Shown one piece after another: positions 1,551-43,919 of a stretch of 64,000 nucleotides of DNA. Position numbers and translations under genes: made by a program. The stretch spans positions 11,346,001 through 11,410,000 of the forward strand of contig OZ059894.1 in NCBI GenBank assembly GCA_964057225.1, in the 5' to 3' direction. The DNA is from Auanema rhodensis. Lineage: Eukaryota; Animalia; Nematoda. The notes beneath the pieces were generated by a model. The model had not been told where the DNA came from and did not search any database. It was given only the letters and a program-made list of their open reading frames with translations. Positions within the stretch are counted from its first letter, which is position 1, and the number at the start of each line of letters is the position of its first letter.

Positions 1551-1669
1551 AGCTTACGACACCCGGGATTCCCAAGCCGTCTCCGATCCAAGTACTAACC
1601 GGGCCCAACGTTGCTTGACTTGCCAGATCGGACGGGATGGCGTACTTTCAACGTGGTATGGTCGTAAGC
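1551..1669 (-). rRNA. 5S: 5S rRNA
   Basis: Same as 1191-1309. Confidence 0.98.
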
Positions 1670-1811
1670 AATGTCATATTCTTCATTATCAGTTATATCA
1701 CTCTAAATCTTGTTGTTAATAGATACGACCACAAAGAAAACAACAGGAACAGTAACAATAACAAAAAAAATTTTTTTTTCACCTATGTGTCTAAAGGTTA
1801 GCCATGTATCC

Positions 1812-1814
<3 letters not shown>

Positions 1815-1855
<41 letters not shown>
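1815..1855. repeat. (TA)n microsatellite (representative; one per unit, ~12 to ~39 repeats)
   Basis: Pure TA run; shortest 47649-47673, longest 35719-35797. Confidence 0.97.
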
Positions 1856-1857
<2 letters not shown>

Positions 1858-1925
1858 ACAGTAAAAAGTCCAATCAAGAGAGAAATTTTTTCAACACATA
1901 GTTGTTTTTTTTTTAAATATCATTG

Positions 1926-2011
1926 TTTTTCCTCATAACTCGGTTTAAACTCGTTCTAACCCGTTGAAATACGTCTAGAAAGTCTTTATAACATGCATAT
2001 GTATGATAGAA
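1926..2011. repeat. Diverged spacer direct repeat (partner at ~2516-2630)
   Basis: CGTTCTAACCCGTTGAAATACGTCTAGAAAGTCT...AACATGCATATG versus CGTTCTAACTTGTTGAAATACGTCTTAAAAGTCT...AACATGCATATG. Confidence 0.8.
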
Positions 2012-3040
2012 CTTCATATTTATTGTAATAGAAAATTTTATTTTCAGACGTCTTGGTTAACAATGATATGTTTTACCCCCTTATAATTTTTATCATAATG
2101 TTCCTTATACGGAACGCTCAATGAAACTTGCTTCCAGAAAAATTTCTTTCTATTTTTTCTTCATATGTACGTAGATACTATAGAGAACTATGATAGAAAA
2201 CTTTAACATTCACGAAATCATCATTTCTCATTACGCTACGGAGGTTTAAAAAGCTGTGTTTTACCTTATAATAGACCGGAAAACCCTTGTGTTAAAACTG
2301 GACCGTTTTTACACATATAAAAATGTCCCGTATTCGGGACCCTAATGTAACTTTTGATTCCCTATATTTTTTTTCATGAAATTTACAATCTACTGTAGAA
2401 AGAAGAATTATTTTTATAAAAACTGTAAATTTTTGAAAAATGAAAACAAAACGAAAACAAAAACAACTTTTTTTTGAACATTTTCTCACCACACAAGGGT
2501 CCCCCCTTACCTACTTTTTTTCTCATTACTCGTTTCAACCTCATCCGATCACTCTGCAAACATGTTTAATCGTTCTAACTTGTTGAAATACGTCTTAAAA
2601 GTCTAAACAACATGCATATGCATAATAGAAACCACCCGAATAGGCCCCCACGCACTAAACGAGATATATACATTACCAGTATAGTAATAGAACACATATT
2701 GAAGATTAATTCGATAAGAACAATTTATTGACGTAGAGAATGTTTGTTCCGAAAAACTACAATATTAAACTATAAAAGTAACAAAAGCGTAGAGGCAGCA
2801 AAGACATGAATAAACATAAATGTAAATACAGAATTACCAGGTAGTACATAAGTATGACAAAAAATTATAAGAAAGCCATGAAAATAGAAGGTTTGTGAAC
2901 AAATGAGAGGTACATCTTTGATCGTATAGTCATTTCTAAACCGTTCGTATGCTGCAGCATCGTCATAAGCGTCACTCAAGTTGAATTTCCATGTGTACTA
3001 CACGATTTTCATTCTTATTGTTACATTCTTTCCCTGAGGG

Positions 3041-3226
3041 AATGGGCCGTTCCCGCCAGCAGTGCAAGAGCGGGTCGACCCGTGAGGTGGAGCTAGCAAG
3101 CCAGCATCTACCTCAAGTCTCAAAAATCGGTTAACCTTATTGTGAACCAATGGAACACATATCGAAGGTTAATTCGATAAGAACGATTACTACACTTTGA
3201 TCTTAGCCAAAAGGCCGAGAAGCGAT
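3041..3226 (-). ncRNA. U2: U2 snRNA
   Basis: Copy of 563-748. Confidence 0.97.
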
Positions 3227-3668
3227 ACAGCATAGCCATGAGTATCAAAGACATCAAGCAAATGTATCGTACTTGTTACGAGTGCACTCTCTCATTTGAA
3301 TATAAAAGTGTGGTTTGACAATCTTGACTGTACAGGTCATAAATGGCTCATATAAACTGTGGATTTACTCAACTTTTGGACTTATTTTTTTCTTATTCGA
3401 AGCGCTGCACTTTTTTCTATTCTTTTTATTCAAATACTTGTATATAGTTTTATATGTACGGTTGCAAAGTTTCCGAATATTTTATATATTTTTATACAAT
3501 AATTAGGAGAAGGTTAATACAATGAAATCTCCCAACTTTACAGTGTTTGTATTGCTTACAGTATCTAGAACAACCACTCTTGTAATATTAGAGCACATAT
3601 CAATCAACAACTTTTTCTAGTTATCAAAGCTTTTTTATTTCTTCAAGATATTTCAAATAAAATATAAA

Positions 3669-3787
3669 AGCTTACGACACCCGGGATTCCCAAGCCGTCT
3701 CCGATCCAAGTACTAACCGGGCCCAACGTTGCTTGACTTGCCAGATCGGACGGGATGGCGTACTTTCAACGTGGTATGGTCGTAAGC
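3669..3787 (-). rRNA. 5S: 5S rRNA
   Basis: Copy of 1191-1309. Confidence 0.97.
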
Positions 3788-6808: not shown

Positions 6809-7988
6809 ACAGTAAAAAGTCCAATCAAGAGAGAAATTTTTTCAACACATAGTTGTTTTTTTTTTAAATATCATTGTTTTTCCTCATAACTCGGTTTAAA
6901 CTCGTTCTAACCCGTTGAAATACGTCTAGAAAGTCTTTATAACATGCATATGTATGATAGAACTTCATATTTATTGTAATAGAAAATTTTATTTTCAGAC
7001 GTCTTGGTTAACAATGATATGTTTTACCCCCTTATAATTTTTATCATAATGTTCCTTATACGGAACGCTCAATGAAACTTGCTTCCAGAAAAATTTCTTT
7101 CTATTTTTTCTTCATATGTACGTAGATACTATAGAGAACTATGATAGAAAACTTTAACATTCACGAAATCATCATTTCTCATTACGCTACGGAGGTTTAA
7201 AAAGCTGTGTTTTACCTTATAATAGACCGGAAAACCCTTGTGTTAAAACTGGACCGTTTTTACACATATAAAAATGTCCCGTATTCGGGACCCTAATGTA
7301 ACTTTTGATTCCCTATATTTTTTTTCATGAAATTTACAATCTACTGTAGAAAGAAGAATTATTTTTATAAAAACTGTAAATTTTTGAAAAATGAAAACAA
7401 AACGAAAACAAAAACAACTTTTTTTTGAACATTTTCTCACACAAGGGTCCCCCCTTACCTACTTTTTTTCTCATTACTCGTTTCAACCTCATCCGATCAC
7501 TCTGCAAACATGTTTAATCGTTCTAACTTGTTGAAATACGTCTTAAAAGTCTAAACAACATGCATATGCATAATAGAAACCACCCGAATAGGCCCCCACG
7601 CACTAAACGAGATATATACATTACCAGTATAGTAATAGAACACATATTGAAGATTAATTCGATAAGAACAATTTATTGACGTAGAGAATGTTTGTTCCGA
7701 AAAACTACAATATTAAACTATAAAAGTAACAAAAGCGTAGAGGCAGCAAAGACATGAATAAACATAAATGTAAATACAGAATTACCAGGTAGTACATAAG
7801 TATGACAAAAAATTATAAGAAAGCCATGAAAATAGAAGGTTTGTGAACAAATGAGAGGTACATCTTTGATCGTATAGTCATTTCTAAACCGTTCGTATGC
7901 TGCAGCATCGTCATAAGCGTCACTCAAGTTGAATTTCCATGTGTACTACACGATTTTCATTCTTATTGTTACATTCTTTCCCTGAGGG

Positions 7989-8136
7989 AATGGGCCGTTC
8001 CCGCCAGCAGTGCAAGAGCGGGTCGACCCGTGAGGTGGAGCTAGCAAGCCAGCATCTACCTCAAGTCTCAAAAATCGGTTAACCTTATTGTGAACCAATG
8101 GAACACATATCGAAGGTTAATTCGATAAGAACGATT
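7989..8136 (-). pseudogene. U2: U2 snRNA 3' fragment (nt 39-186) downstream of truncated Utopia
   Basis: U2 match stops at ...GAACGATT (8136) where retrotransposon 3' end begins. Confidence 0.92.
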
Positions 8137-10213
8137 AATGGTTTATTGAATAACTAATGTTATGATACAATAAATAACCAATAAAAAAGAGCCCAGAATC
8201 GGGGAGACGGTATTACCAGTACAACTTAAAACAGCAAGTAATTAAAAAGTACATAATAAGACACATTGCCAACAGAGGCTAAAACGACTCAAGAGTCGGG
8301 GGAGTGGGTTAAAAAAAATGAACAAAAAAATGAATATTAAAGCAGAACAATGAGAAATCAAGTGCCGCTATGATCAAACAATTTGAGTGCCTACGGCAAT
8401 GATGTTAAAAATAAACAACAAAATACATGTACCAATGAAGGTCAGAAAGAAAGAAACAAAAGACAAAAATAAGTAATACAAAAAGTAAATACATTACAAT
8501 CAAATCACAAACAAGTCAATTGATAATTTCTTCTTCATATTGCCTTACACTAGAAACATGTTCCACGTAGATATTCCTGGCCCACTTGATGGTATCGGCG
8601 ACGACGAGCTTCTCCATTAGCCGGTTGTAGTGGCTGCTGATCTTGAGTGATCGGAGGGCTTGTCCGTTGAGCGGGTCCATAGTTCCAAGCATTCCTACGA
8701 CATATGCTTCTACACTAGTCTTATAACCAAGACATTGGTATTGGCTGGCTATGTCAGCATATTTCCTCTCCTTTATCATACGCGCGGCTATCATGGCTTG
8801 ACGGCGGTTTTCATAGCTCACTGTAACATCAACGATACTACAGTGTTTTGCGTCATGATCGACCACTACTATGTCAGGTCGGAGTGTACTATTAATGCCA
8901 GGAAGAGGCTGGTTAGTGTAAACTTCTCCGTTTTTAGGCTCTGGCAGGGCTTTGATAAGACGGTCCACGATGTTGTTGTGGCGGAGTTGGATTGCTCTCG
9001 TGTGAGAGTGGCAGTGTCCAAGAACATGTGCAGCAGTTTCGTTGGAGTAACTACACCTGCGGCACTGTTTGTTTCCTTCTCCGTGTCTTCTACAGCCATT
9101 GAGCTGGAGAGTATTGAGTCGAGCCTTGTGGATGAATCGCCAATCAGCAAACCGTATGAAATCTCCCTTCGCCATAAAGTGATTGGACGCTTTGTTGAGC
9201 ATTGTGACATCAAAGACTTTCCCTTGATCCGGTTTTTGAAGAAGGATCCGAAGGTCTTTCAGCCATAATGCACGTCGCAGGCTTCTGTGGCATAGTGAAG
9301 GTGTTAACAGTTGGTTGTTTAGATTGAGTTCTAAACCACTTTCGAGGCATGTCCAGTTAGCGTTGATGAGTTTCTTGAGTTGACGCATCGCTACTCTTAC
9401 TCTAGTCCAGATGGAGGAAACATCAGATGTTTCGGTGTCGAAAATGCCATCAACGGAACCGTTGTAATATGCAGCTGTCTCATCGTTACTGGCTTGACGT
9501 TTAATCCTTTTTGATGCTACTTTTTTTGAGTCTTGATGCGCAATATCAGCTACTACAAGATCAGATGACTTCAAAAGTTGGTAGGCATGAGTGACTTCAC
9601 AGACGTCTGACAGGTGTTGGAGTCGAGAGAGACCAAGTCCGCCGTAGTTAGTTGGCAGGTAGATTGGTTCAGCACTGGCGTTTGGAGGATAGTGCATCCA
9701 TCTACGGGCACAGCGTTTGAGTTCTTTGTCAAAGGCGACTAGTTTACTCTTTGGGACGTGGCCATTCGTCATATGAAAATTAAGGCAGGGCATCAGGAAG
9801 GTGCGTACTGCGTCAGCTTTCTGCCATTCAGCAAGTAAGGATTTGTCAATTTTTTCCAAGTGTTGACTCATAATATTCACTGTTGGAACCGCAGACTTAT
9901 GTAAATGCATTCCAGTAGGGATTCCCAGGTGGGAGTAGCTGTCGAATTTGCTGAGAGCGGGTAGAGAGGAGCTCTGTAGCATGTATGAGGCTGTTGATAT
10001 TTTCCCTTTGTCGATCGTCAAGGTGGCGCATTTCGCTGGTTTGAAGGTCAAGCCTGTGAAATTAGCCGCATTTGATGCTGCGTCCAACATTTTCTGTAGA
10101 TCTTCTGATGATGAGGAGACCAGGGCAAGGTCATCGGCGTACGCTAGCACAGCGATGTTGTGGTTGTGTAGCTTATAGCCAGTAGAGGATTCCAAGATGG
10201 TTTTAATTAGAGG
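8137..10213 (-). mobile_element. 5'-truncated Utopia-like non-LTR retrotransposon inserted in U2
   Basis: Nearly identical to 39236-41313; same 3' junction; truncated inside the RT domain just after the FNLAIE motif. Confidence 0.95.
8516..10213 (-). pseudogene. C-terminal ~565 codons of Utopia RT/RLE ORF (5'-truncated)
   Basis: YADD, GGLG, CCHC knuckle, RHN, RPD and KERKY motifs present; N-terminal RT motifs missing; first 26 codons of the listed ORF are U2 DNA. Confidence 0.9.
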
Positions 10214-10367
10214 GGTCGACCCGTGAGGTGGAGCTAGCAAGCCAGCATCTACCTCAAGTCTCAAAAATCGGTTAACCTTATTGTGAACCAATGGAACACA
10301 TATCGAAGGTTAATTCGATAAGAACGATTACTACACTTTGATCTTAGCCAAAAGGCCGAGAAGCGAT
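10213..10367 (-). pseudogene. U2: U2 snRNA 5' fragment (nt 1-155) fused to truncated Utopia
   Basis: Exact U2 sequence from ATCGCTTC to GGGTCGACCC, then element sequence; lacks stem-loop IV. Confidence 0.92.
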
Positions 10368-13959: not shown

Positions 13960-15139
13960 ACAGTAAAAAGTCCAATCAAGAGAGAAATTTTTTCAACACA
14001 TAGTTGTTTTTTTTTTAAATATCATTGTTTTTCCTCATAACTCGGTTTAAACTCGTTCTAACCCGTTGAAATACGTCTAGAAAGTCTTTATAACATGCAT
14101 ATGTATGATAGAACTTCATATTTATTGTAATAGAAAATTTTATTTTCAGACGTCTTGGTTAACAATGATATGTTTTACCCCCTTATAATTTTTATCATAA
14201 TGTTCCTTATACGGAACGCTCAATGAAACTTGCTTCCAGAAAAATTTCTTTCTATTTTTTCTTCATATGTACGTAGATACTATAGAGAACTATGATAGAA
14301 AACTTTAACATTCACGAAATCATCATTTCTCATTACGCTACGGAGGTTTAAAAAGCTGTGTTTTACCTTATAATAGACCGGAAAACCCTTGTGTTAAAAC
14401 TGGACCGTTTTTACACATATAAAAATGTCCCGTATTCGGGACCCTAATGTAACTTTTGATTCCCTATATTTTTTTTCATGAAATTTACAATCTACTGTAG
14501 AAAGAAGAATTATTTTTATAAAAACTGTAAATTTTTGAAAAATGAAAACAAAACGAAAACAAAAACAACTTTTTTTTGAACATTTTCTCACACAAGGGTC
14601 CCCCCTTACCTACTTTTTTTCTCATTACTCGTTTCAACCTCATCCGATCACTCTGCAAACATGTTTAATCGTTCTAACTTGTTGAAATACGTCTTAAAAG
14701 TCTAAACAACATGCATATGCATAATAGAAACCACCCGAATAGGCCCCCACGCACTAAACGAGATATATACATTACCAGTATAGTAATAGAACACATATTG
14801 AAGATTAATTCGATAAGAACAATTTATTGACGTAGAGAATGTTTGTTCCGAAAAACTACAATATTAAACTATAAAAGTAACAAAAGCGTAGAGGCAGCAA
14901 AGACATGAATAAACATAAATGTAAATACAGAATTACCAGGTAGTACATAAGTATGACAAAAAATTATAAGAAAGCCATGAAAATAGAAGGTTTGTGAACA
15001 AATGAGAGGTACATCTTTGATCGTATAGTCATTTCTAAACCGTTCGTATGCTGCAGCATCGTCATAAGCGTCACTCAAGTTGAATTTCCATGTGTACTAC
15101 ACGATTTTCATTCTTATTGTTACATTCTTTCCCAGAGGG

Positions 15140-15287
15140 AATGGGCCGTTCCCGCCAGCAGTGCAAGAGCGGGTCGACCCGTGAGGTGGAGCTAGCAAGC
15201 CAGCATCTACCTCAAGTCTCAAAAATCGGTTAACCTTATTGTGAACCAATGGAACACATATCGAAGGTTAATTCGATAAGAACGATT
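15140..15287 (-). pseudogene. U2: U2 snRNA 3' fragment (nt 39-186)
   Basis: U2 match ends at ...GAACGATT (15287). Confidence 0.92.
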
Positions 15288-16115
15288 TATTGAAGTAGAT
15301 AATGTTTGTCCCGGAGGACTACAATATTAAAATAATTACTGAAGCCCGAAGGCAGCGAGAAATAGTAAGGATACTACCTGCACTGAGTGCGTCGTATCAT
15401 AAAAAAAGAGATAGCTAATGGGCAAGTTGAAGAGCTTGAAATTAACAATGACGTCACTAGAAGTAAAGTTTTCTATCTGCAGCTGCGGGTAAAGAGGGTC
15501 AGCGTAAGCAGAATTCAATTCTACCAACAATTAGTGGGAACATTGAGAGAACAGATGAAGGAGGAAATTGTAACTTCAAGTAAAATAGATTATATCTTCA
15601 GCTGCGGGTAAAGAGAGTCAGCTTTGTACAGATTACTAGTTTACATAAGAAGTGGTAACATTTCAAAAAAGGAGCACAACATAAAAAACGAGACTACGGA
15701 CTATGAGGTAAATGTTATCATTGTCTGGATCGATGATTCGGCATTTGATTGCAGCTGCGGATTGAGTGGATCAGCTTGCATGGCGTCCGCATTCGACATC
15801 AGGGAAAATGATGAGTTTCTTGAGGTCCGGCTCGGCGGGCTGTTATGTCCTATTCCCTGTTGATGGTGTTGTTGTCCTTGAGCTTGTTCTTCTTCCCAGA
15901 AAAAAAAAACTGTGAAGCTGAAGAGTCCTATTAAACGTCTTTAAACGCAAGATTAATAAGAAGCTACTACAGCTAACACAGGACCGCCTCAAGGCCTGGT
16001 AGATCAACCAGTGTTGCTTCAATCACCAAGTATTGCGGCCTGGGCCCTTGGATCAATTCACAACACCAGTATAGCAATGGAACACATATCGAAGGTTAAT
16101 TCGATAAGAACGATT
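15288..16115 (-). mobile_element. 828-bp non-autonomous U2-targeted retroelement (SINE/SIDE-like), copy 1: 787 bp unique + 41 bp of U2 nt 39-79
   Basis: Inserted at the Utopia site; no long ORF; 3' tail resembles the Utopia 3' UTR; identical copy in next unit. Confidence 0.85.
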
Positions 16116-16153
16116 ACTACACTTTGATCTTAGCCAAAAGGCCGAGAAGCGAT
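16075..16153 (-). pseudogene. U2: U2 snRNA 5' fragment (nt 1-79)
   Basis: Exact U2 to ...GTTCCATTG, then element-specific CTATACTGG. Confidence 0.9.
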
Positions 16154-18590: not shown

Positions 18591-19418
18591 TATTGAAGTA
18601 GATAATGTTTGTCCCGGAGGACTACAATATTAAAATAATTACTGAAGCCCGAAGGCAGCGAGAAATAGTAAGGATACTACCTGCACTGAGTGCGTCGTAT
18701 CATAAAAAAAGAGATAGCTAATGGGCAAGTTGAAGAGCTTGAAATTAACAATGACGTCACTAGAAGTAAAGTTTTCTATCTGCAGCTGCGGGTAAAGAGG
18801 GTCAGCGTAAGCAGAATTCAATTCTACCAACAATTAGTGGGAACATTGAGAGAACAGATGAAGGAGGAAATTGTAACTTCAAGTAAAATAGATTATATCT
18901 TCAGCTGCGGGTAAAGAGAGTCAGCTTTGTACAGATTACTAGTTTACATAAGAAGTGGTAACATTTCAAAAAAGGAGCACAACATAAAAAACGAGACTAC
19001 GGACTATGAGGTAAATGTTATCATTGTCTGGATCGATGATTCGGCATTTGATTGCAGCTGCGGATTGAGTGGATCAGCTTGCATGGCGTCCGCATTCGAC
19101 ATCAGGGAAAATGATGAGTTTCTTGAGGTCCGGCTCGGCGGGCTGTTATGTCCTATTCCCTGTTGATGGTGTTGTTGTCCTTGAGCTTGTTCTTCTTCCC
19201 AGAAAAAAAAAACTGTGAAGCTGAAGAGTCCTATTAAACGTCTTTAAACGCAAGATTAATAAGAAGCTACTACAGCTAACACAGGACCGCCTCAAGGCCT
19301 GGTAGATCAACCAGTGTTGCTTCAATCACCAAGTATTGCGGCCTGGGCCCTTGGATCAATTCACAACACCAGTATAGCAATGGAACACATATCGAAGGTT
19401 AATTCGATAAGAACGATT
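18591..19418 (-). mobile_element. 828-bp non-autonomous U2-targeted retroelement, copy 2
   Basis: Same sequence and junctions as 15288-16115 (offset 3303 bp). Confidence 0.85.
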
Positions 19419-27317: not shown

Positions 27318-27436
27318 AGCTTACGACACCCGGGATTCCCAAGCCGTCTCCGATCCAAGTACTAACCGGGCCCAACGTTGCTTGACTTGCCAGATCGGAC
27401 GGGATGGCGTACTTTCAACGTGGTATGGTCGTAAGC
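27318..27436 (-). rRNA. 5S: 5S rRNA (three-copy unit)
   Basis: Copy of 1191-1309. Confidence 0.97.
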
Positions 27437-27677
27437 AATGTTATATTCTTCATTATCAGTTATATCACTCTAAATCTTGTTGTTAATAGTTAGGACCACA
27501 AAGAAAACAACAGGAACAGTAACAAATGAAATGCCCAAACTTTACAGTGTTCGAGTTATTTACAGTATCTAAGACTACCTCTGTCGTGTTATTAGAGCAA
27601 ACATTCGATTAACAACAACTTTTTTTTAGTTATCAAAGCTTTTTTATTTCTTCAAAAAATTTCAAATAAAATATAAA

Positions 27678-27796
27678 AGCTTACGACACCCGGGATTCCC
27701 AAGCCGTCTCCGATCCAAGTACTAACCGGGCCCAACGTTGCTTGACTTGCCAGATCGGACGGGATGGCGTACTTTCAACGTGGTATGGTCGTAAGC
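27678..27796 (-). rRNA. 5S: 5S rRNA (extra copy in three-copy unit)
   Basis: Copy of 1191-1309. Confidence 0.97.
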
Positions 27797-28037
27797 AATG
27801 TTATATTCTTCATTATCAGTTATATCACTCTAAATCTTGTTGTTAATAGTTAGGACCACAAAGAAAACAACAGGAACAGTAACAAATGAAATGCCCAAAC
27901 TTTACAGTGTTCGAGTTATTTACAGTATCTAAGACTACCTCTGTCGTGTTATTAGAGCAAACATTCGATTAACAACAACTTTTTTTTAGTTATCAAAGCT
28001 TTTTTATTTCTTCAAAAAATTTCAAATAAAATATAAA

Positions 28038-28156
28038 AGCTTACGACACCCGGGATTCCCAAGCCGTCTCCGATCCAAGTACTAACCGGGCCCAACGTTG
28101 CTTGACTTGCCAGATCGGACGGGATGGCGTACTTTCAACGTGGTATGGTCGTAAGC
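28038..28156 (-). rRNA. 5S: 5S rRNA (three-copy unit)
   Basis: Copy of 1191-1309. Confidence 0.97.
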
Positions 28157-37607: not shown

Positions 37608-37726
37608 AGCTTACGACACCCGGGATTCCCAAGCCGTCTCCGATCCAAGTACTAACCGGGCCCAACGTTGCTTGACTTGCCAGATCGGACGGGATGGCGT
37701 ACTTTCAACGTGGTATGGTCGTAAGC
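37608..37726 (-). rRNA. 5S: 5S rRNA (single-copy unit)
   Basis: Copy of 1191-1309; left flank of copy a, right flank of copy b. Confidence 0.97.
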
Positions 37727-39235: not shown

Positions 39236-42200
39236 AATGGTTTATTGAATAACTAATGTTATGATACAATAAATAACCAATAAAAAAGAGCCCAGAATCG
39301 GGGAGACGGTATTACCAGTACAACTTAAAACAGCAAGTAATTAAAAAGTACATAATAAGACACATTGCCAACAGAGGCTAAAACGACTCAAGAGTCGGGG
39401 GAGTGGGTTAAAAAAAAATGAACAAAAAAAATGAATATTAAAGCAGAACAATGAGAAATCAAGTGCCGCTATGATCAAACAATTTGAGTGCCTACGGCAA
39501 TGATGTTAAAAATAAACAACAAAATACATGTACCAATGAAGGTCAGAAAGAAAGAAACAAAAGACAAAATAAGTAATACAAAAAGTAAATACATTACAAT
39601 CAAATCACAAACAAGTCAATTGATAATTTCTTCTTCATATTGCCTTACACCAGAAACATGTTCCACGTAGATATTCCTGGCCCACTTGATGGTATCGGCG
39701 ACGACGAGCTTCTCCATTAGCCGGTTGTAGTGGCTGCTGATCTTGAGTGATCGGAGGGCTTGTCCGTTGAGCGGGTCCATAGTTCCAAGCATTCCTACGA
39801 CATACGCTTCTACACTAGTCTTATAACCAAGACATTGGTATTGGCTGGCTATGTCAGCATATTTCCTCTCCTTTATCATACGCGCGGCTATCATGGCTTG
39901 ACGGCGGTTTTCATAGCTCACTGTAACATCAACGATACTACAGTGTTTTGCGTCATGATCGACCACTACTATGTCAGGTCGGAGTGTACTATTAATGCCA
40001 GGAAGAGGCTGGTTAGTGTAAACTTCTCCGTTTTTAGGCTCTGGCAGGGCTTTGATAAGACGGTCCACGATGTTGTTGTGGCGGAGTTGGATTGCTCTCG
40101 TGTGAGAGTGGCAGTGTCCAAGAACATGTGCAGCAGTTTCGTTGGAGTAACTACACCTGCGGCACTGTTTGTTTCCTTCTCCGTGTCTTCTACAGCCATT
40201 GAGCTGGAGAGTATTGAGTCGAGCCTTGTGGATGAATCGCCAATCAGCAAACCGTATGAAATCTCCCTTCGCCATAAAGTGATTGGACGCTTTGTTGAGC
40301 ATTGTGACATCAAAGACTTTCCCTTGATCCGGTTTTTGAAGAAGGATCCGAAGGTCTTTCAGCCATAATGCACGTCGCAGGCTTCTGTGGCATAGTGAAG
40401 GTGTTAACAGTTGGTTGTTTAGATTGAGTTCTAAACCACTTTCGAGGCATGTCCAGTTAGCGTTGATGAGTTTCTTGAGTTGACGCATCGCTACTCTTAC
40501 TCTAGTCCAGATGGAGGAAACATCAGATGTTTCGGTGTCGAAAATGCCATCAACGGAACCGTTGTAATATGCAGCTGTCTCATCGTTACTGGCTTGACGT
40601 TTAATCCTTTTTGATGCTACTTTTTTTGAGTCTTGATGCGCAATATCAGCTACTACAAGATCAGATGACTTCAAAAGTTGGTAGGCATGAGTGACTTCAC
40701 AGACGTCTGACAGGTGTTGGAGTCGAGAGAGACCAAGTCCGCCGTAGTTAGTTGGCAGGTAGATTGGTTCAGCACTGGCGTTTGGAGGATAGTGCATCCA
40801 TCTACGGGCACAGCGTTTGAGTTCTTTGTCAAAGGCGACTAGTTTACTCTTTGGGACGTGGCCATTCGTCATATGAAAATTAAGGCAGGGCATCAGGAAG
40901 GTGCGTACTGCGTCAGCTTTCTGCCATTCAGCAAGTAAGGATTTGTCAATTTTTTCCAAGTGTTGACTCATAATATTCACTGTTGGAACCGCAGACTTAT
41001 GTAAATGCATTCCAGTAGGGATTCCCAGGTGGGAGTAGCTGTCAAATTTGCTAAGAGCGGGTAGAGAGGAGCTCTGTAGCATGTATGAGGCTGTTGATAT
41101 TTTCCCTTTGTCGATCGTCAAGGTGGCGCATTTCGCTGGTTTGAAGGTCAAGCCTGTGAAATTAGCCGCATTTGATGCTGCGTCCAACATTTTCTGTAGA
41201 TCTTCTGATGATGAGGAGACCAGGGCAAGGTCATCGGCGTACGCTAGCACAGCGATGTTGTGGTTGTGTAGCTTATAGCCTGTAGAGGTTTCCAAGATGG
41301 TTTTAATTAGAGGTTCAATGGCAAGGTTGAACAGGATCGGAGATAGTGGGGATCCTTGTAACACACCTGCGTGAACTGGAATGGTCGAAGTGAGTCCGGA
41401 GCCTGTCTGGATTCTTGTAGAGGCATCTGTGTATAGAGCTCGTACTCGGGATATTGAGGCTTCAGCCATTCCTGACCATCTTAGAACGTCTAGCAGAGTT
41501 TCGTGTGGCAGCGATCCAAAAGCGTTTGCGAGATCAAGCCAAGCAATTGCAATTTTCTCACGTTTACGTTTAGCGTCCGCAATGGTACTTTGCAACATAA
41601 AGTTGTGTTCCATGCATCCAGCTTTGGCCACAAAGCCCTTTTGGGAGGGAGAAAGTCTTTTTTCTGCTCTTGCCCATGTTAGCAGTCGATGCGTAAGACA
41701 AGCTGAGTACGTCTTACCAATTGTGCACGAAAGTGCTATTGGTCGCCAGTTGTTAATGTCAGCTTTATCACCTTTCTTATGGATGAGGACGGTGGTCGAC
41801 TCTTTCCAGGAAAAAGGGATGTGTCCTAGCTTGTGTACGGTGTTAAATATCGCTGCTAATATGTGACCTCCTTGGTCAAATTTCTTCCAGTGCGAGTATC
41901 GAAGTCCATCAGCTCCTGGAGCCGTATCGCTGCAACGTCGTATGCGTTCCCAGACTTCCAAAGGGGTGAAAACACCTTCTAGTGGGTCGGTACTAGCTGG
42001 CAAATCCGGTCTGGTGACTGTGATGGGGAGGGCTGGGCCTTGACTGCTGTGAACAGAAAGGAAGTGTTTTTCAACCTCTGCAGATGGTATGGTGCAGGTT
42101 TCACTTTGTTCTCCGAGCAGTTGTCGAAAGGCTTTCTTCTTGTTGGCCCTCCAAAGCTTCTGGAGCTTCATCGCCTGGGTTTTTTGGTCTTCCTCAGGTT

Positions 42201-42946
42201 GTGTGTGTGGTCGGCGCCTTTGTCGGAAGTTGGGAACTTTGATCATAATGTCAAGAGACTTTCTGATTGTGTCTACCAACTCTTCCAGGACCTGCTCGAG
42301 CTCACTTTTGCACACTACCTTTTTAATTCTATCCACCCAAATATTTTCAGAGTTTCTATTCGGATCAGGGTCGGCAAAAGATGGTTCTGTACTCGGAACC
42401 CTGATCTCGTTGAATATTTCACTCTCTCGCGGAAGGGGGGAAACTTCGGCCTCTGGGGACAAGTCCAGAATTGGGGCCTCAAACAAGCGTACCGTTGATG
42501 GAGATCCTTGTTCCTGTCCACTGGATGATGTTTCCTCCATTGTACGCTCCTCCACGGGCGGGGTGGTCGTCCTTGTGCCTGGTGGGCGGGTGTTCCTGAT
42601 CCTCCGCAATATAGGGCGGGAACTGGGCTCTCTCGGAGATAGAGGTGAGATCACCACAGTTTCCTCTATGATGCGGAGACATCCTTCAGCTTTTTTCTGA
42701 TGGCTTTTAACGGCCTTCAGATTGCTGGTGAGGCCACAGGCACGGCACTCAAATTCTACTCTGACCTCATGTTCTCTCCGAAGATGGCGGACGAGACCAT
42801 TGTGGTCTGAGTAGGATCGCGGAATAGGAGCGCAGATTGAACACGAAAAAGGGCTCTGAAGAGGCACCTTTAGCTTGTAAAGCCCTTGCTCCATCTCTAG
42901 CAGATCTAAAGACTTACGTAGTACAGTTGCAATATCGATTTAGCCA
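39236..42946 (-). mobile_element. Utopia-like (NeSL group, RLE-type) U2-specific non-LTR retrotransposon with intact ORF
   Basis: Single ORF ZnF-RT-CCHC-RLE; 380-nt 3' UTR ending AATAAACCAT(T) joined to U2 nt 38/39; no LTRs; U2 target plus RLE endonuclease indicates Utopia rather than APE-bearing Keno. Confidence 0.95.
39616..42894 (-). CDS. Non-LTR retrotransposon protein: N-terminal zinc fingers, reverse transcriptase, CCHC knuckle, restriction-like endonuclease (1092 aa)
   Basis: CSIC..HLRREH and CRAC..H..C fingers; APGADG, WRPIAL, QKGF, LDLANAFGS, GVLQGSPLSPILFN, YADD, HLG; CRRC..ETAAHVLGHC; RHN, RPD..D, KERKY; in-frame TAA 16 codons upstream of the ATG. Confidence 0.97.
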   Translation of the reverse strand: MEQGLYKLKVPLQSPFSCSICAPIPRSYSDHNGLVRHLRREHEVRVEFECRACGLTSNLKAVKSHQKKAEGCLRIIEETVVISPLSPREPSSRPILRRIRNTRPPGTRTTTPPVEERTMEETSSSGQEQGSPSTVRLFEAPILDLSPEAEVSPLPRESEIFNEIRVPSTEPSFADPDPNRNSENIWVDRIKKVVCKSELEQVLEELVDTIRKSLDIMIKVPNFRQRRRPHTQPEEDQKTQAMKLQKLWRANKKKAFRQLLGEQSETCTIPSAEVEKHFLSVHSSQGPALPITVTRPDLPASTDPLEGVFTPLEVWERIRRCSDTAPGADGLRYSHWKKFDQGGHILAAIFNTVHKLGHIPFSWKESTTVLIHKKGDKADINNWRPIALSCTIGKTYSACLTHRLLTWARAEKRLSPSQKGFVAKAGCMEHNFMLQSTIADAKRKREKIAIAWLDLANAFGSLPHETLLDVLRWSGMAEASISRVRALYTDASTRIQTGSGLTSTIPVHAGVLQGSPLSPILFNLAIEPLIKTILETSTGYKLHNHNIAVLAYADDLALVSSSSEDLQKMLDAASNAANFTGLTFKPAKCATLTIDKGKISTASYMLQSSSLPALSKFDSYSHLGIPTGMHLHKSAVPTVNIMSQHLEKIDKSLLAEWQKADAVRTFLMPCLNFHMTNGHVPKSKLVAFDKELKRCARRWMHYPPNASAEPIYLPTNYGGLGLSRLQHLSDVCEVTHAYQLLKSSDLVVADIAHQDSKKVASKRIKRQASNDETAAYYNGSVDGIFDTETSDVSSIWTRVRVAMRQLKKLINANWTCLESGLELNLNNQLLTPSLCHRSLRRALWLKDLRILLQKPDQGKVFDVTMLNKASNHFMAKGDFIRFADWRFIHKARLNTLQLNGCRRHGEGNKQCRRCSYSNETAAHVLGHCHSHTRAIQLRHNNIVDRLIKALPEPKNGEVYTNQPLPGINSTLRPDIVVVDHDAKHCSIVDVTVSYENRRQAMIAARMIKERKYADIASQYQCLGYKTSVEAYVVGMLGTMDPLNGQALRSLKISSHYNRLMEKLVVADTIKWARNIYVEHVSGVRQYEEEIIN

Positions 42947-43005
42947 TTAACCTTATTGTGAACCAATGGAACACATATCGAAGGTTAATTCGATAAGAAC
43001 GATTA
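42947..43005 (-). pseudogene. U2: Internal U2 fragment (nt ~38-96) at 5' end of Utopia
   Basis: TTAACCTTATTGTGAACC...GAACGATTA matches U2 exactly; U2 nt 1-37 absent. Confidence 0.9.
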
Positions 43006-43919
43006 AAAATTTAAATTTTAAAAATTTCTTTCTATTTTTTCTTCATATGTACGTAGATACTATAGAGAACTATGATAGAAAACTTTAACATTCACGAAAT
43101 CATCATTTCTCATTACGCTACGGAGGTTTAAAAAGCTGTGTTTTACCTTATAATAGACCGGAAAACCCTTGTGTTAAAACTGGACCGTTTTTACACATAT
43201 AAAAATGTCCCGTATTCGGGACCCTAATGTAACTTTTGATTCCCTATATTTTTTTTCATGAAATTTACAATCTACTGTAGAAAGAAGAATTATTTTTATA
43301 AAAACTGTAAATTTTTGAAAAATGAAAACAAAACGAAAACAAAAACAACTTTTTTTTGAACATTTTCTCACACAAGGGTCCCCCCTTACCTACTTTTTTT
43401 CTCATTACTCGTTTCAACCTCATCCGATCACTCTGCAAACATGTTTAATCGTTCTAACTTGTTGAAATACGTCTTAAAAGTCTAAACAACATGCATATGC
43501 ATAATAGAAACCACCCGAATAGGCCCCCACGCACTAAACGAGATATATACATTACCAGTATAGTAATAGAACACATATTGAAGATTAATTCGATAAGAAC
43601 AATTTATTGACGTAGAGAATGTTTGTTCCGAAAAACTACAATATTAAACTATAAAAGTAACAAAAGCGTAGAGGCAGCAAAGACATGAATAAACATAAAT
43701 GTAAATACAGAATTACCAGGTAGTACATAAGTATGACAAAAAATTATAAGAAAGCCATGAAAATAGAAGGTTTGTGAACAAATGAGAGGTACATCTTTGA
43801 TCGTATAGTCATTTCTAAACCGTTCGTATGCTGCAGCATCGTCATAAGCGTCACTCAAGTTGAATTTCCATGTGTACTACACGATTTTCATTCTTATTGT
43901 TACATTCTTTCCCTGAGGG

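What the first reader, a model, noticed from the sequence alone, without database searches (positions are those of the whole stretch)
15288..16153. Candidate new system: a U2-headed, U2-targeted non-autonomous element riding on Utopia
Seen: an 828-bp insert with no credible ORF sits at exactly the Utopia site, in the same orientation. Its head is U2 nt 39-79, and the same U2(79)/CTATACTGGT junction occurs in the much older relic, so the U2 piece is part of the element rather than a one-off duplication. Its tail shares ordered blocks with the Utopia 3' UTR (plus strand TTTATTGAA..TAATGTT, TACAATA, AGCCC(A)GAA, GAGA, TA.TACC) but is clearly diverged, and the body shows no similarity I can see to the Utopia ORF. 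Knowledge: R2/R1 SIDEs in Drosophila rDNA and crocodilian U1/U2-derived SINEU exist; I know of no described Utopia-dependent site-specific SINE. Inference: it is transcribed from the host U2 promoter as U2(1-79)+body, mobilised in trans by Utopia protein, and rebuilds its own target, giving a three-tier system of U2/5S array, Utopia and hyperparasite.
Basis: partly seen in the sequence, partly recalled or inferred. Interest (0 to 1): 0.9.

Follow-up and report, generated by a model that had tools for sequence, protein, structure and literature searches.

The report
Short non-coding rider at Utopia's U2 site
A 787-base non-coding, transcribed sequence sits in about one in ten U2 snRNA genes at the exact nucleotide where the U2-specific retrotransposon Utopia integrates, and it is most likely a non-autonomous passenger of that type of element, although fresh jumps have not been shown.

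Summary
A 787-bp ORF-less insert (E) splits a U2 gene as U2(1-79)·E·U2(39-190). Its 3' junction at U2 nt 38/39 and its orientation match the two Utopia copies in the window, and a fossil tail·U2(39-79)·head junction lies in every array unit.

New evidence:
- The two window copies are an array duplication, not two insertions.
- In DNA contigs of three other organism labels, E occupies about 9-10% of units, always with the same two U2 junctions.
- At least two further variants (E2, E3) share E's ends but differ in the middle.
- All three variants appear in an RNA run that lacks the neighbouring spacer.
- Tail similarity to Utopia is not significant over 120 nt (p about 0.07), but it is over the terminal 30-40 nt (p about 0.001-0.005, chosen post hoc).

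Best reading (0.6): a non-autonomous, U2-site-specific retroelement family that uses Utopia-type target-primed reverse transcription.

Still open: whether the resident Utopia is the driver, whether U2(39-79) is an inherited leader or a target duplication, and whether the U2 promoter drives transcription. Other inserts at this site have 5' junctions at nt 68-96. The scan noted the same element elsewhere in this genome.

The parts
15288..16074 (-). E copy 1: 787-bp non-coding insert. Its head starts CTATACTGGT at 16074 and its tail ends TTCAATA at 15288.
   Evidence: It interrupts the array unit between unit positions 152 and 112. It has no ORF above 79 aa and no Pfam hit. It shows no similarity to Utopia by blastn, tblastn or tblastx.
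16075..16115 (-). U2 nt 39-79 upstream of E. This is the 5' copy of the 41-bp duplication, either a target-site duplication or an inherited leader.
   Evidence: Exact U2(39-79) matches are listed. The junction U2(79)/CTATACTGGT is also present in organisms B, C and D (records 12 and 20).
16116..16153 (-). U2 nt 1-38. Together with 16075-16115 it keeps an intact nick site (38/39) 5' of E.
15136..15287 (-). U2 nt 39-190 downstream of E, a head-less U2. The 3' copy of the 41-bp repeat is 15247-15287.
   Evidence: It is 100% identical to unit positions 1-152.
18591..19377 (-). E copy 2, identical to copy 1.
   Evidence: All 787 of 787 bases are identical. The surrounding 3303-bp units are identical for 2123 nt, up to a microsatellite indel, so this copy arose by unit duplication.
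15980..16074 (-). Conserved head of the family (E nt 1-95). It is shared base for base by variants E, E2 and E3.
   Evidence: In one search, contig record 12 (15980-16100) has depth 468.5, close to the sum of E 429, E2 19 and E3 30. The variant contigs rejoin E at 15969-15980.
15288..15411 (-). Conserved tail of the family. It includes the hairpins GUCC-UCCG-GGAC (15308-15319) and GCC-UUCG-GGC (15344-15353) and the terminal AACATTA..TTCAATA.
   Evidence: E2 matches 15301-15407 with 7 differences. Three of them fall in the UUCG loop and one turns a G.U pair into A-U. In the relic the first hairpin reads GUUU-UUCG-GAAC, so all 4 differences keep the pairing or the UNCG loop. The terminal similarity to Utopia has p 0.001-0.005.
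15471..15775 (-). Three spaced copies of a 33-nt motif, at 15471-15503, 15590-15622 and 15743-15775. The sense strand reads GCTGAC(C/T)CTCTTTACCCGCAGCTG.., which resembles a branch point plus a 3' splice site.
   Evidence: One search finds 100%, 91% and 70% identity. The function is unknown. The RNA contig across the region is unspliced (record 3).
15890..15899 (-). A run of 10 T on the sense strand. Its length varies by +1 or +2 in other runs.
   Evidence: table 4. That this run and three further T6-T7 runs argue against Pol III transcription is inferred from the oligo-T Pol III terminator rule (PMC4494074).
14774..14917 (-). Relic fixed in every unit: about 93 nt of E-like tail (14825-14917), a U2(39-79)-like stretch with 36/41 matches (14784-14824), and the first 10 nt of the E head (14774-14783).
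   Evidence: The tail gives z = 17. Beyond about 95 nt the similarity is not significant. Sequence past the 10-nt head is unrelated to E.
39237..42946 (-). Full-length Utopia, the only reverse transcriptase source in the window. The ORF is 39616-42894 (1092 aa), the 5' UTR is 52 nt and the 3' UTR is 379 nt. It is preceded by U2 nt 39-96 (42947-43004).
   Evidence: RVT_1 scores 6e-28. YADD, the CCHC motif CRRC..H..HC and an RPD..D nuclease region are present. Homologues are listed.
8138..10208 (-). 5'-truncated Utopia, 99.6% identical to positions 1639-3710 of the full copy. It is flanked upstream by U2 nt 1-160 and downstream by U2 nt 39-190.

Best explanation
E belongs to a small family (E, E2, E3 and an older lineage seen as the relic) of about 0.8-kb non-coding, non-autonomous retroelements. 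They live only in U2 snRNA genes.

**Shown**
- E carries no protein.
- It lies in the U2 sense orientation, with its 3' end abutting U2 nt 39, the nick site used by Utopia restriction-like-endonuclease retrotransposons.
- Its terminal ~40 nt resemble the Utopia 3' end.
- Family members keep head and tail while the middle diverges.
- It is present in RNA.
- Each copy leaves a complete U2(1-79) target on its 5' side.

**Inferred**
1. A U2/E co-transcript is made by Pol II, probably from the U2 promoter.
2. A Utopia-type protein supplied in trans recognises the tail.
3. That protein nicks the bottom strand at 38/39 and primes reverse transcription. Pairing of downstream U2 sequence in the transcript with the target would help here, as it does for R2.
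4. The 5' end is then joined so that U2(39-79) is duplicated. Either the leader U2(1-79) is part of the RNA and resolves by homology with the target, or the top strand is opened about 40 nt downstream.
5. The regenerated site allows serial insertion, which produces tail·U2(39-79)·head arrangements like the relic.
6. Unequal crossing-over within the array then spreads E-bearing units.
For: **Position and orientation.** The precise 3' junction at nt 38/39 and the shared orientation with two Utopia copies are shown. Published Utopia behaviour agrees (PMC4640811).

**No coding capacity.**

**All copies lie in U2.** Depths of the junction contigs (408 and 468) equal the body depth (429) in X5, and the same holds in X7 and X8.

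**Frequency.** E occupies about 9-10% of units in three DNA runs and 2 of about 25 units here.

**Variants.**
- E2 has an identical 95-nt head, 567 replaced letters, and a tail with 7 differences in 107 nt that spare the stems.
- E3 is defined by the joint 15411->15969.

**Conserved hairpin.** The relic tail has z = 17, and its hairpin differences from E all keep the pairing or the UNCG loop.

**Transcription.** RNA run X10 holds E at 16.8, E2 at 62.3 and E3 at 23.6. It shows 0 over the 10-fold more abundant spacer 14700-14910, so these are transcripts and not DNA carry-over.

**Tail similarity.** The terminal tails resemble each other at p 0.001-0.005. TCAATAAA also lies near the 3' end of a scorpion Utopia that abuts U2 nt 39.

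**Tandem precedent.** That scorpion locus shows Utopia copies in tandem, joined by a U2(39-..) piece.
Against: - No independent insertion is demonstrated. The window copies are a unit duplication, and every copy seen in four organism labels has the same two junctions.
- No 5'-truncated E copy was seen.
- Organisms A-D carry a virtually identical E, so they give no evolutionary depth.
- The tail is not significantly like the resident Utopia 3' UTR over 120 nt, and it has a hairpin that Utopia lacks.
- Predicted tail and head folds are no better than shuffles.
- The origin of the body is unknown. The host genome could not be searched, so a captured cellular RNA is not excluded.
- The RNA 5' end was not observed.
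Confidence: 0.6

Rival explanations
1. E is a SIDE-type derivative. It would be an internally deleted or rearranged copy of a second autonomous Utopia family, present elsewhere in the genome or extinct, whose 5' end starts CTATACTGGT and whose 3' UTR carries the UNCG hairpin. The resident Utopia would then be unrelated to E, or only an occasional helper.
For: - The E tail differs from the resident Utopia tail except for the terminal ~40 nt.
- The relic shows that this tail type is old.
- Related organisms hold other, unrelated elements in the same site. One is a contig of at least 1.8 kb beginning U2(42-80)+GAAATCACTAGG at high depth, and there are other tails ending before nt 39.
- Phytophthora keeps up to five Utopia families in one U2 array (PMC4640811).
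Against: - No ORF remnant was detected in E by tblastn or tblastx against the resident protein or by Pfam.
- No such parent is in the window.
- E, E2 and E3 all have the same ~0.79-kb length, which suggests a stable non-coding family and not assorted deletions.
Confidence: 0.2
2. E was a one-off event spread by the array. In this reading a single chimeric insertion occurred long ago, for example a Utopia-type reverse transcriptase switching template onto some cellular RNA. Everything else (about 10% of units, E2 and E3, and the relic) would come from unequal crossing-over, crossing-over between the 41-bp repeats, and divergence in place. There would be no ongoing mobility.
For: - The two window copies are a unit duplication.
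- All copies share both junctions, and no truncated copy was seen.
- Recombination between the flanking 41-bp repeats would by itself create tail·U2(39-79)·head (inference).
Against: - The head is 100% identical and the tail differs at 7 of 107 positions (about 93% identical) while the middle is under 90%, and the tail changes spare the stems.
- All four E-versus-relic differences in the 12-nt hairpin keep its pairing or its UNCG loop.
- All three variants are transcribed.
- The flanking U2 pieces are 100% identical to functional U2.
Confidence: 0.15
3. E is not a mobile element. It would be a host non-coding RNA gene or regulatory insert that exploits the U2 promoter and is kept in a subset of units for a cellular function. 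Its three motifs resembling a branch point plus 3' splice site, and its head pairing with the U2 branch-point recognition region, could for example titrate splicing factors.
For: - E is transcribed.
- It has three motifs like a branch point plus 3' splice site.
- The head junction pairs with U2 nt 27-42 at -12.2 kcal/mol, p 0.008.
Against: - The position is exactly the Utopia nick site.
- It has a Utopia-like terminal motif and a target duplication like the neighbouring Utopia copies.
- The relic has a tandem-insertion structure.
- No known RNA family matches.
Confidence: 0.05

Closest known systems
SIDEs (short internally deleted elements) of R2 and R1 in Drosophila rDNA (Eickbush & Eickbush 2012, PMC3414825)
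   Same: Both are non-coding passengers of a site-specific, restriction-like-endonuclease non-LTR retrotransposon. Both sit at the parent's exact site in a tandem multicopy RNA gene, are co-transcribed with the host gene, and are maintained at low frequency in the array.
   Different: - SIDEs are recognisable deletion derivatives that keep the parent's 5' ribozyme and 3' UTR.
- E shares only about 40 terminal nt with the resident Utopia.
- E has no detectable ribozyme.
- E has a body of unknown origin.
- E comes with a 41-bp piece of the target at its 5' end.
Utopia (U2-specific RLE non-LTR retrotransposons; Kojima & Jurka 2015, PMC4640811)
   Same: The 3' junction before U2 nt 39 and the orientation are the same. 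Variable 5' junctions and tandem insertions are also reported for Utopia.
   Different: - Utopia is autonomous, with one ORF carrying zinc fingers, RT and RLE. E has none.
- The paper contains no mention of a non-autonomous partner (0 occurrences).
- No searched paper combines Utopia, non-autonomous and U2 snRNA.
SINEU (crocodilian SINEs with U1/U2-derived heads; Kojima 2015, PMC4494074)
   Same: Both have U2-derived sequence at the 5' end of a non-autonomous retroelement. In both, transcription is unexplained by an internal Pol III promoter, and U2 pieces are added recurrently.
   Different: - SINEU elements are dispersed or Mariner-targeted, have poly(A) tails, and are thought to be moved by Tx1-type (APE) LINEs.
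- E is confined to U2 genes and has no poly(A) tail.
- E's U2 piece is nt 39-79 (or 1-79) and may simply be a target duplication.
R2 co-transcript and 5'-junction mechanism (Eickbush et al. 2013, PMC3774820)
   Same: Host-gene sequence at the 5' end of the element RNA can guide 5' joining by annealing of the cDNA to the target. This is the model proposed here for a heritable U2 leader.
   Different: In R2 the host sequence lies upstream of the insertion site and is defined by ribozyme self-cleavage. Here the extra piece lies downstream of the nick (nt 39-79), and no ribozyme is seen.

Membership tests
Utopia (for the 1092-aa element taken as putative driver) | Single ORF with N-terminal zinc fingers, an RT domain, and a C-terminal CCHC motif plus PD-(D/E)xK-type nuclease | tested here: met
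   RVT_1 scores 6e-28. C2H2-like motifs at the N-terminus, YADD, CRRC..H..HC and an RPD..D region are present.
Utopia (for the 1092-aa element taken as putative driver) | 3' end abuts U2 starting at nt 39 | tested here: met
   with PMC4640811. A 43%-identical scorpion homologue also abuts U2 nt 39.
Non-autonomous partner of a site-specific non-LTR element (generic) | No coding capacity, with the same site and orientation as the autonomous element | tested here: met
Non-autonomous partner of a site-specific non-LTR element (generic) | 3' end shared with the autonomous partner | tested here: inconclusive
   Over 120 nt, p is about 0.07. Over the terminal 30-40 nt, p is 0.001-0.005, but that window was chosen post hoc. 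E also has a hairpin that is absent from Utopia.
Non-autonomous partner of a site-specific non-LTR element (generic) | Several independent insertions, shown by different flanks, truncations or nesting | tested here: inconclusive
   The window copies are a duplication. All junctions are identical in four organism labels. Only the relic and the E2 and E3 variants suggest more than one event.
Non-autonomous partner of a site-specific non-LTR element (generic) | Transcribed | tested here: met
   RNA-run contigs carry E, E2 and E3, while the neighbouring spacer is absent. The start site was not seen.
SIDE (R2/R1 type) | Derived from the autonomous element by internal deletion, so the 5' end and 3' UTR are recognisably the parent's | tested here: not met
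   E shows no similarity to the resident Utopia outside the terminal ~40 nt. A different parent cannot be excluded.
SIDE (R2/R1 type) | 5' self-cleaving (HDV-like) ribozyme | tested here: inconclusive
   No Rfam family matches E even at E <= 10. The head fold is no better than shuffles. HDV-like ribozymes are hard to detect by sequence.
SINE (classical) | Pol III head derived from tRNA, 7SL or 5S, with an internal promoter | tested here: not met
   No such Rfam match was found. A T10 run and several T6-7 runs lie on the sense strand.
SINEU | snRNA-derived head, a poly(A) tail and dispersed copies | tested here: not met
   E has no poly(A) tail. All copies are inside U2. The U2 piece may be a target duplication.

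The most novel reading that the evidence does not exclude
Both E and Utopia have made part of their target gene a heritable 5' leader, U2 nt 1-79 for E and nt 1-96 for Utopia. In this reading:
- They are transcribed from the host's U2 snRNA promoter.
- They integrate by homology of that leader with the target.
- Each jump therefore rebuilds a fresh target and a promoter-linked copy.

E would then be a dedicated hyperparasite of this system. Its strictly conserved 95-nt head pairs with the U2 branch-point recognition sequence. That would make three tiers: a U2/5S array, Utopia, and a rider, with no ribozyme involved.
Probability: 0.3. Interest if true: 0.75.

Novelty: new variant of a known kind. 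Interest (0 to 1): 0.55.

Why it matters
Site-specific non-LTR retrotransposons such as R2 are models for target-primed reverse transcription and are being turned into gene-insertion tools.

Non-coding passengers show which RNA features the enzyme needs in cis. Passengers are documented for R2 and R1, but none was found in the searched literature for Utopia or for any snRNA-gene-specific element.

E offers a compact natural substrate with a 95-nt head and a tail of about 120 nt. With it one could ask:
- what a Utopia-type protein recognises;
- how 5' junctions with long target duplications arise;
- whether an snRNA promoter can drive a retroelement.

It also bears on how U2 arrays tolerate about 10% disrupted genes.

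Tried and rejected
- **E versus Utopia by BLAST.** blastn, tblastn and tblastx of E against the resident Utopia gave nothing beyond chance. A local Smith-Waterman alignment of E against the whole Utopia found only a 16-nt chance match.
- **Known RNA families.** Rfam at E <= 10 across E found no ribozyme or known RNA. The apparent U2 hit over 16028-16153 is just U2(1-79) plus unaligned head.
- **ORFs.** Pfam on the five longest ORFs gave nothing.
- **RNA folds.** Folds of the E tail, the Utopia tail and the E head alone are no better than shuffles, with z from -1.3 to +0.3.
- **Extent of the relic.** Similarity beyond about 95 nt of tail and beyond the 10-nt head is not significant. My first impression that the whole 311-nt U2 3' flank derives from E was dropped.
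- **Closest Utopia proteins (55-56% identity).** They come from metagenome contigs. L001 has no U2 flank within the contig, and P0002's DNA could not be fetched.
- **Metagenome scans.** Two scans with U2(39-..) patterns of this organism gave zero hits and one chance bacterial hit, L002.
- **Findings search by sequence.** It came back blank.
This holds for E (p 0.008) but not for the Utopia leader by duplex energy (p 0.32), although that leader does contain UACUAC.
- I deliberately left U2 nt 1-38 out of the stretch sent to the reads tools.

Full report
**Setting**

Rfam finds 20 intact U2 genes and about 45 5S genes, all on the minus strand. They form a tandem unit of about 2475 bp. Four U2 genes are interrupted, all at the same place:
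- a full-length element at 39237-42946;
- a 5'-truncated copy of it at 8138-10208, 99.6% identical to positions 1639-3710 of the full copy;
- two copies of a 787-bp insert, called E here, at 15288-16074 and 18591-19377.

**The long element is a Utopia**
- It has one 1092-aa ORF.
- It carries RVT_1, N-terminal zinc-finger motifs, YADD, a CCHC motif and an RPD..D nuclease region.
- Its 3' end abuts U2 nt 39. That junction is the published hallmark of Utopia (PMC4640811).
- Its relatives are 38-56% identical proteins from nematodes, a scorpion, beetles and metagenomes.
- In the scorpion locus L003 the homologue also ends directly before U2 nt 39. It is followed by a second element copy joined through a short U2(39-..) piece.

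**The observation**

On the minus strand the locus reads U2(1-79), then E (787 bp), then U2(39-190). The edges are unambiguous, so exactly nt 39-79 (41 bp) is duplicated.

E has no ORF longer than 79 aa, no Pfam hit and no nucleotide or translated similarity to Utopia. A run of 10 T and several T6-7 runs lie on the sense strand. These argue against Pol III transcription; that is inference from the oligo-T Pol III terminator rule noted in PMC4494074.

Every array unit also carries a fossil about 270 nt downstream of U2:
- about 93 nt resembling the E tail (z = 17, 0 of 300 shuffles);
- then a U2(39-79)-like stretch with 36/41 matches, all five differences being transitions;
- then the first 10 nt of the E head.

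Further similarity in either direction is not significant.

1. The two window copies are identical, and so are their units for 2123 nt, up to a microsatellite indel. They are one insertion duplicated with its unit.
2. The tail blocks shared with the Utopia 3' UTR are not above chance over 120 nt (z = 1.8, 22 of 300 shuffles).
3. Restricted to the terminal 30, 40 or 60 nt, the alignment TATTGTA .. AACATTA N4-5 TTCAATA has p = 0.001, 0.005 and 0.014. That window was chosen post hoc.
4. TCAATAAA also sits near the 3' end of the resident and the scorpion Utopia. In E it is completed by U2 nt 39-40.
5. E additionally has a UNCG hairpin (GUCC-UCCG-GGAC) that Utopia lacks. The relic version reads GUUU-UUCG-GAAC. 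All four differences keep either the pairing or the tetraloop type, which suggests a constrained RNA structure.

**Evidence from public runs (Logan contigs, so they show presence, not absence)**

*Occupancy.* E is held almost letter for letter in DNA of four organism labels.
- Its depth is 8.6-11% of the array-unit depth in three DNA runs: 429 versus about 4970, 10.7 versus 102.5, and 207 versus about 1900-2300.
- The contigs over both junctions have the same depth as the body, so essentially all copies sit in U2 with the same junctions.
- This rules out the refutation criterion 'copies mainly outside U2'.

*Variants.*
- A 677-702-nt contig (E2) shares E nt 69-95 exactly. It replaces 572 letters with 567 others, and it matches the tail at 15301-15407 with 7 differences.
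- Three of those differences change the UUCG loop to UAAC, and one turns a G.U pair into A-U.
- A third form (E3) is defined by the joint 15411->15969.
- The shared head contig (15980-16100) has a depth close to the sum of the three forms, so all three share the U2(79)/CTATACTGGT junction.

*RNA.*
- In RNA run X10, E has depth 16.8, E2 62.3 and E3 23.6.
- The spacer 14700-14910 is ten times more abundant than E in DNA, yet it has depth 0 in this run. The signal is therefore RNA.
- The RNA contigs stop at E nt 66 and at E nt 774, which are graph branch points.
- Contigs containing the human-like U2 5' end may be filtered out. The start site therefore remains unknown.

**Leader or target duplication?**

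In the other organisms the same U2 site holds further inserts:
- a 17-nt mini-insert between U2 ..78 and U2 40.., at about 10% of units in one run;
- a 25-nt filler;
- element heads joined at nt 68, 73, 78 and 80;
- other tails ending before nt 39-45.

5' junctions in the 68-96 range are therefore a general feature of integration here. This agrees with the published 'variable 5' boundaries'.

On the other hand, within a family the junction is constant:
- nt 79 for E, E2, E3 and the relic;
- nt 96 for full-length Utopia in the window and in two other organisms;
- nt 160 for the 5'-truncated Utopia copy, which is the exception.

That pattern is what an inherited U2 leader would give, copied with each full-length cDNA and resolved by homology. 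It would equally follow if all full-length copies descend from single insertions by DNA-level duplication. Crossing-over between the two 41-bp repeats would also create the relic's tail·U2·head order. I leave this question at about even odds.

**Conclusion**

The best-supported reading (0.6) is a non-autonomous, U2-site-specific retroelement family that uses Utopia-type target-primed reverse transcription.

*Shown:*
- the site and the orientation;
- the absence of coding capacity;
- confinement to U2;
- conserved ends with a diverged middle;
- a constrained tail hairpin;
- transcription;
- a retained target site.

*Inferred:*
- the identity of the driver;
- the promoter;
- the 5'-joining mechanism;
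- mobility itself.

*Rivals:*
- a derivative of a second Utopia family (0.2);
- a one-off chimera spread by array dynamics (0.15);
- a host RNA gene (0.05).

**Novelty**

Non-coding passengers of site-specific RLE elements are known as the R2/R1 SIDEs (PMC3414825). E fails the SIDE definition with respect to the resident element. It also fails the SINE and SINEU definitions.

No non-autonomous Utopia partner appears in the Utopia paper or in any searched paper. I class E as a new variant of a known kind.

Other first-stage notes of this scan describe the same 788-bp element and the fossil junction about 496 kb further along this genome. I could not read those windows.

Noticed in passing
window 42947-43020: The full-length Utopia is preceded by U2 nt 39-96 only. 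Directly upstream, about 14 nt of A/T filler joins to unit position 1580. About 1.4 kb of the unit is therefore missing: U2 nt 1-38, the U2 promoter and both 5S genes.
   Followed up: partly
window 8138-10208 with flanks 7985-8137 and 10209-10367: The 5'-truncated Utopia has U2 nt 1-160 upstream and nt 39-190 downstream. That is a 122-bp duplication, compared with 58 bp for the full copy and 41 bp for E.
   Followed up: partly
window 15246-15287 / 16076-16114 (U2 nt 39-80), seen in runs X5, X7, X8: Contigs show a 17-nt mini-insert (sense AAATTTTGGTATTTCAT, with variants) between U2 ..78 and U2 40... Its depth is about 10% of units in one organism. A 25-nt filler lies between nt 80 and nt 48 in another (table 5c).
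   Followed up: no
window 15228-15275 (U2 nt 51-98), depth in DNA runs: Summed depth over this piece of U2 is 8 to 67 times the array-unit depth: 40885 versus 4970, 6820 versus 102, and 23492 versus about 2000. Head-less U2 fragments therefore seem far more numerous than whole units. Multi-placed contigs may inflate the figure.
   Followed up: no
window 14911-15135: The RNA run holds one contig running from U2 nt 50 through the U2 3' end and 225 nt into the downstream spacer. It holds nothing further on. This points to read-through transcription past U2 or past E-disrupted U2 (record 1).
   Followed up: no
window 16068-16127 (U2 nt 27-42 with U2 nt 76-79 + E nt 1-7): The E head junction AUUG·CUAUACU can pair with the U2 branch-point recognition region at -12.2 kcal/mol (p 0.008 versus shuffles). 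U2(1-79) plus the E head folds with z = -3.3. The Utopia leader contains UACUAC, but its duplex energy is not unusual, p 0.32.
   Followed up: partly
window 14784-14824 and every unit's equivalent: All five differences between the relic U2 piece and real U2 are C>T or G>A. The four differences in the tail hairpin are of the same kind. This transition-only decay suggests cytosine deamination.
   Followed up: no
L003 2089-2190 and 6368-6390: In the scorpion Centruroides, a 43%-identical Utopia has U2 nt 1 to about 60 upstream and ends before U2 nt 39. A second element copy follows, starting after a short U2(39-..) piece. This is the same tandem-with-linker layout as the relic.
   Followed up: partly
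window 27318-28156, 37608-37726 and unit positions ~1254-1301: The number of 5S genes per unit varies. One unit has three, the unit before the Utopia has one, and the others have two. A dinucleotide microsatellite in the spacer also varies in length between units.
   Followed up: no
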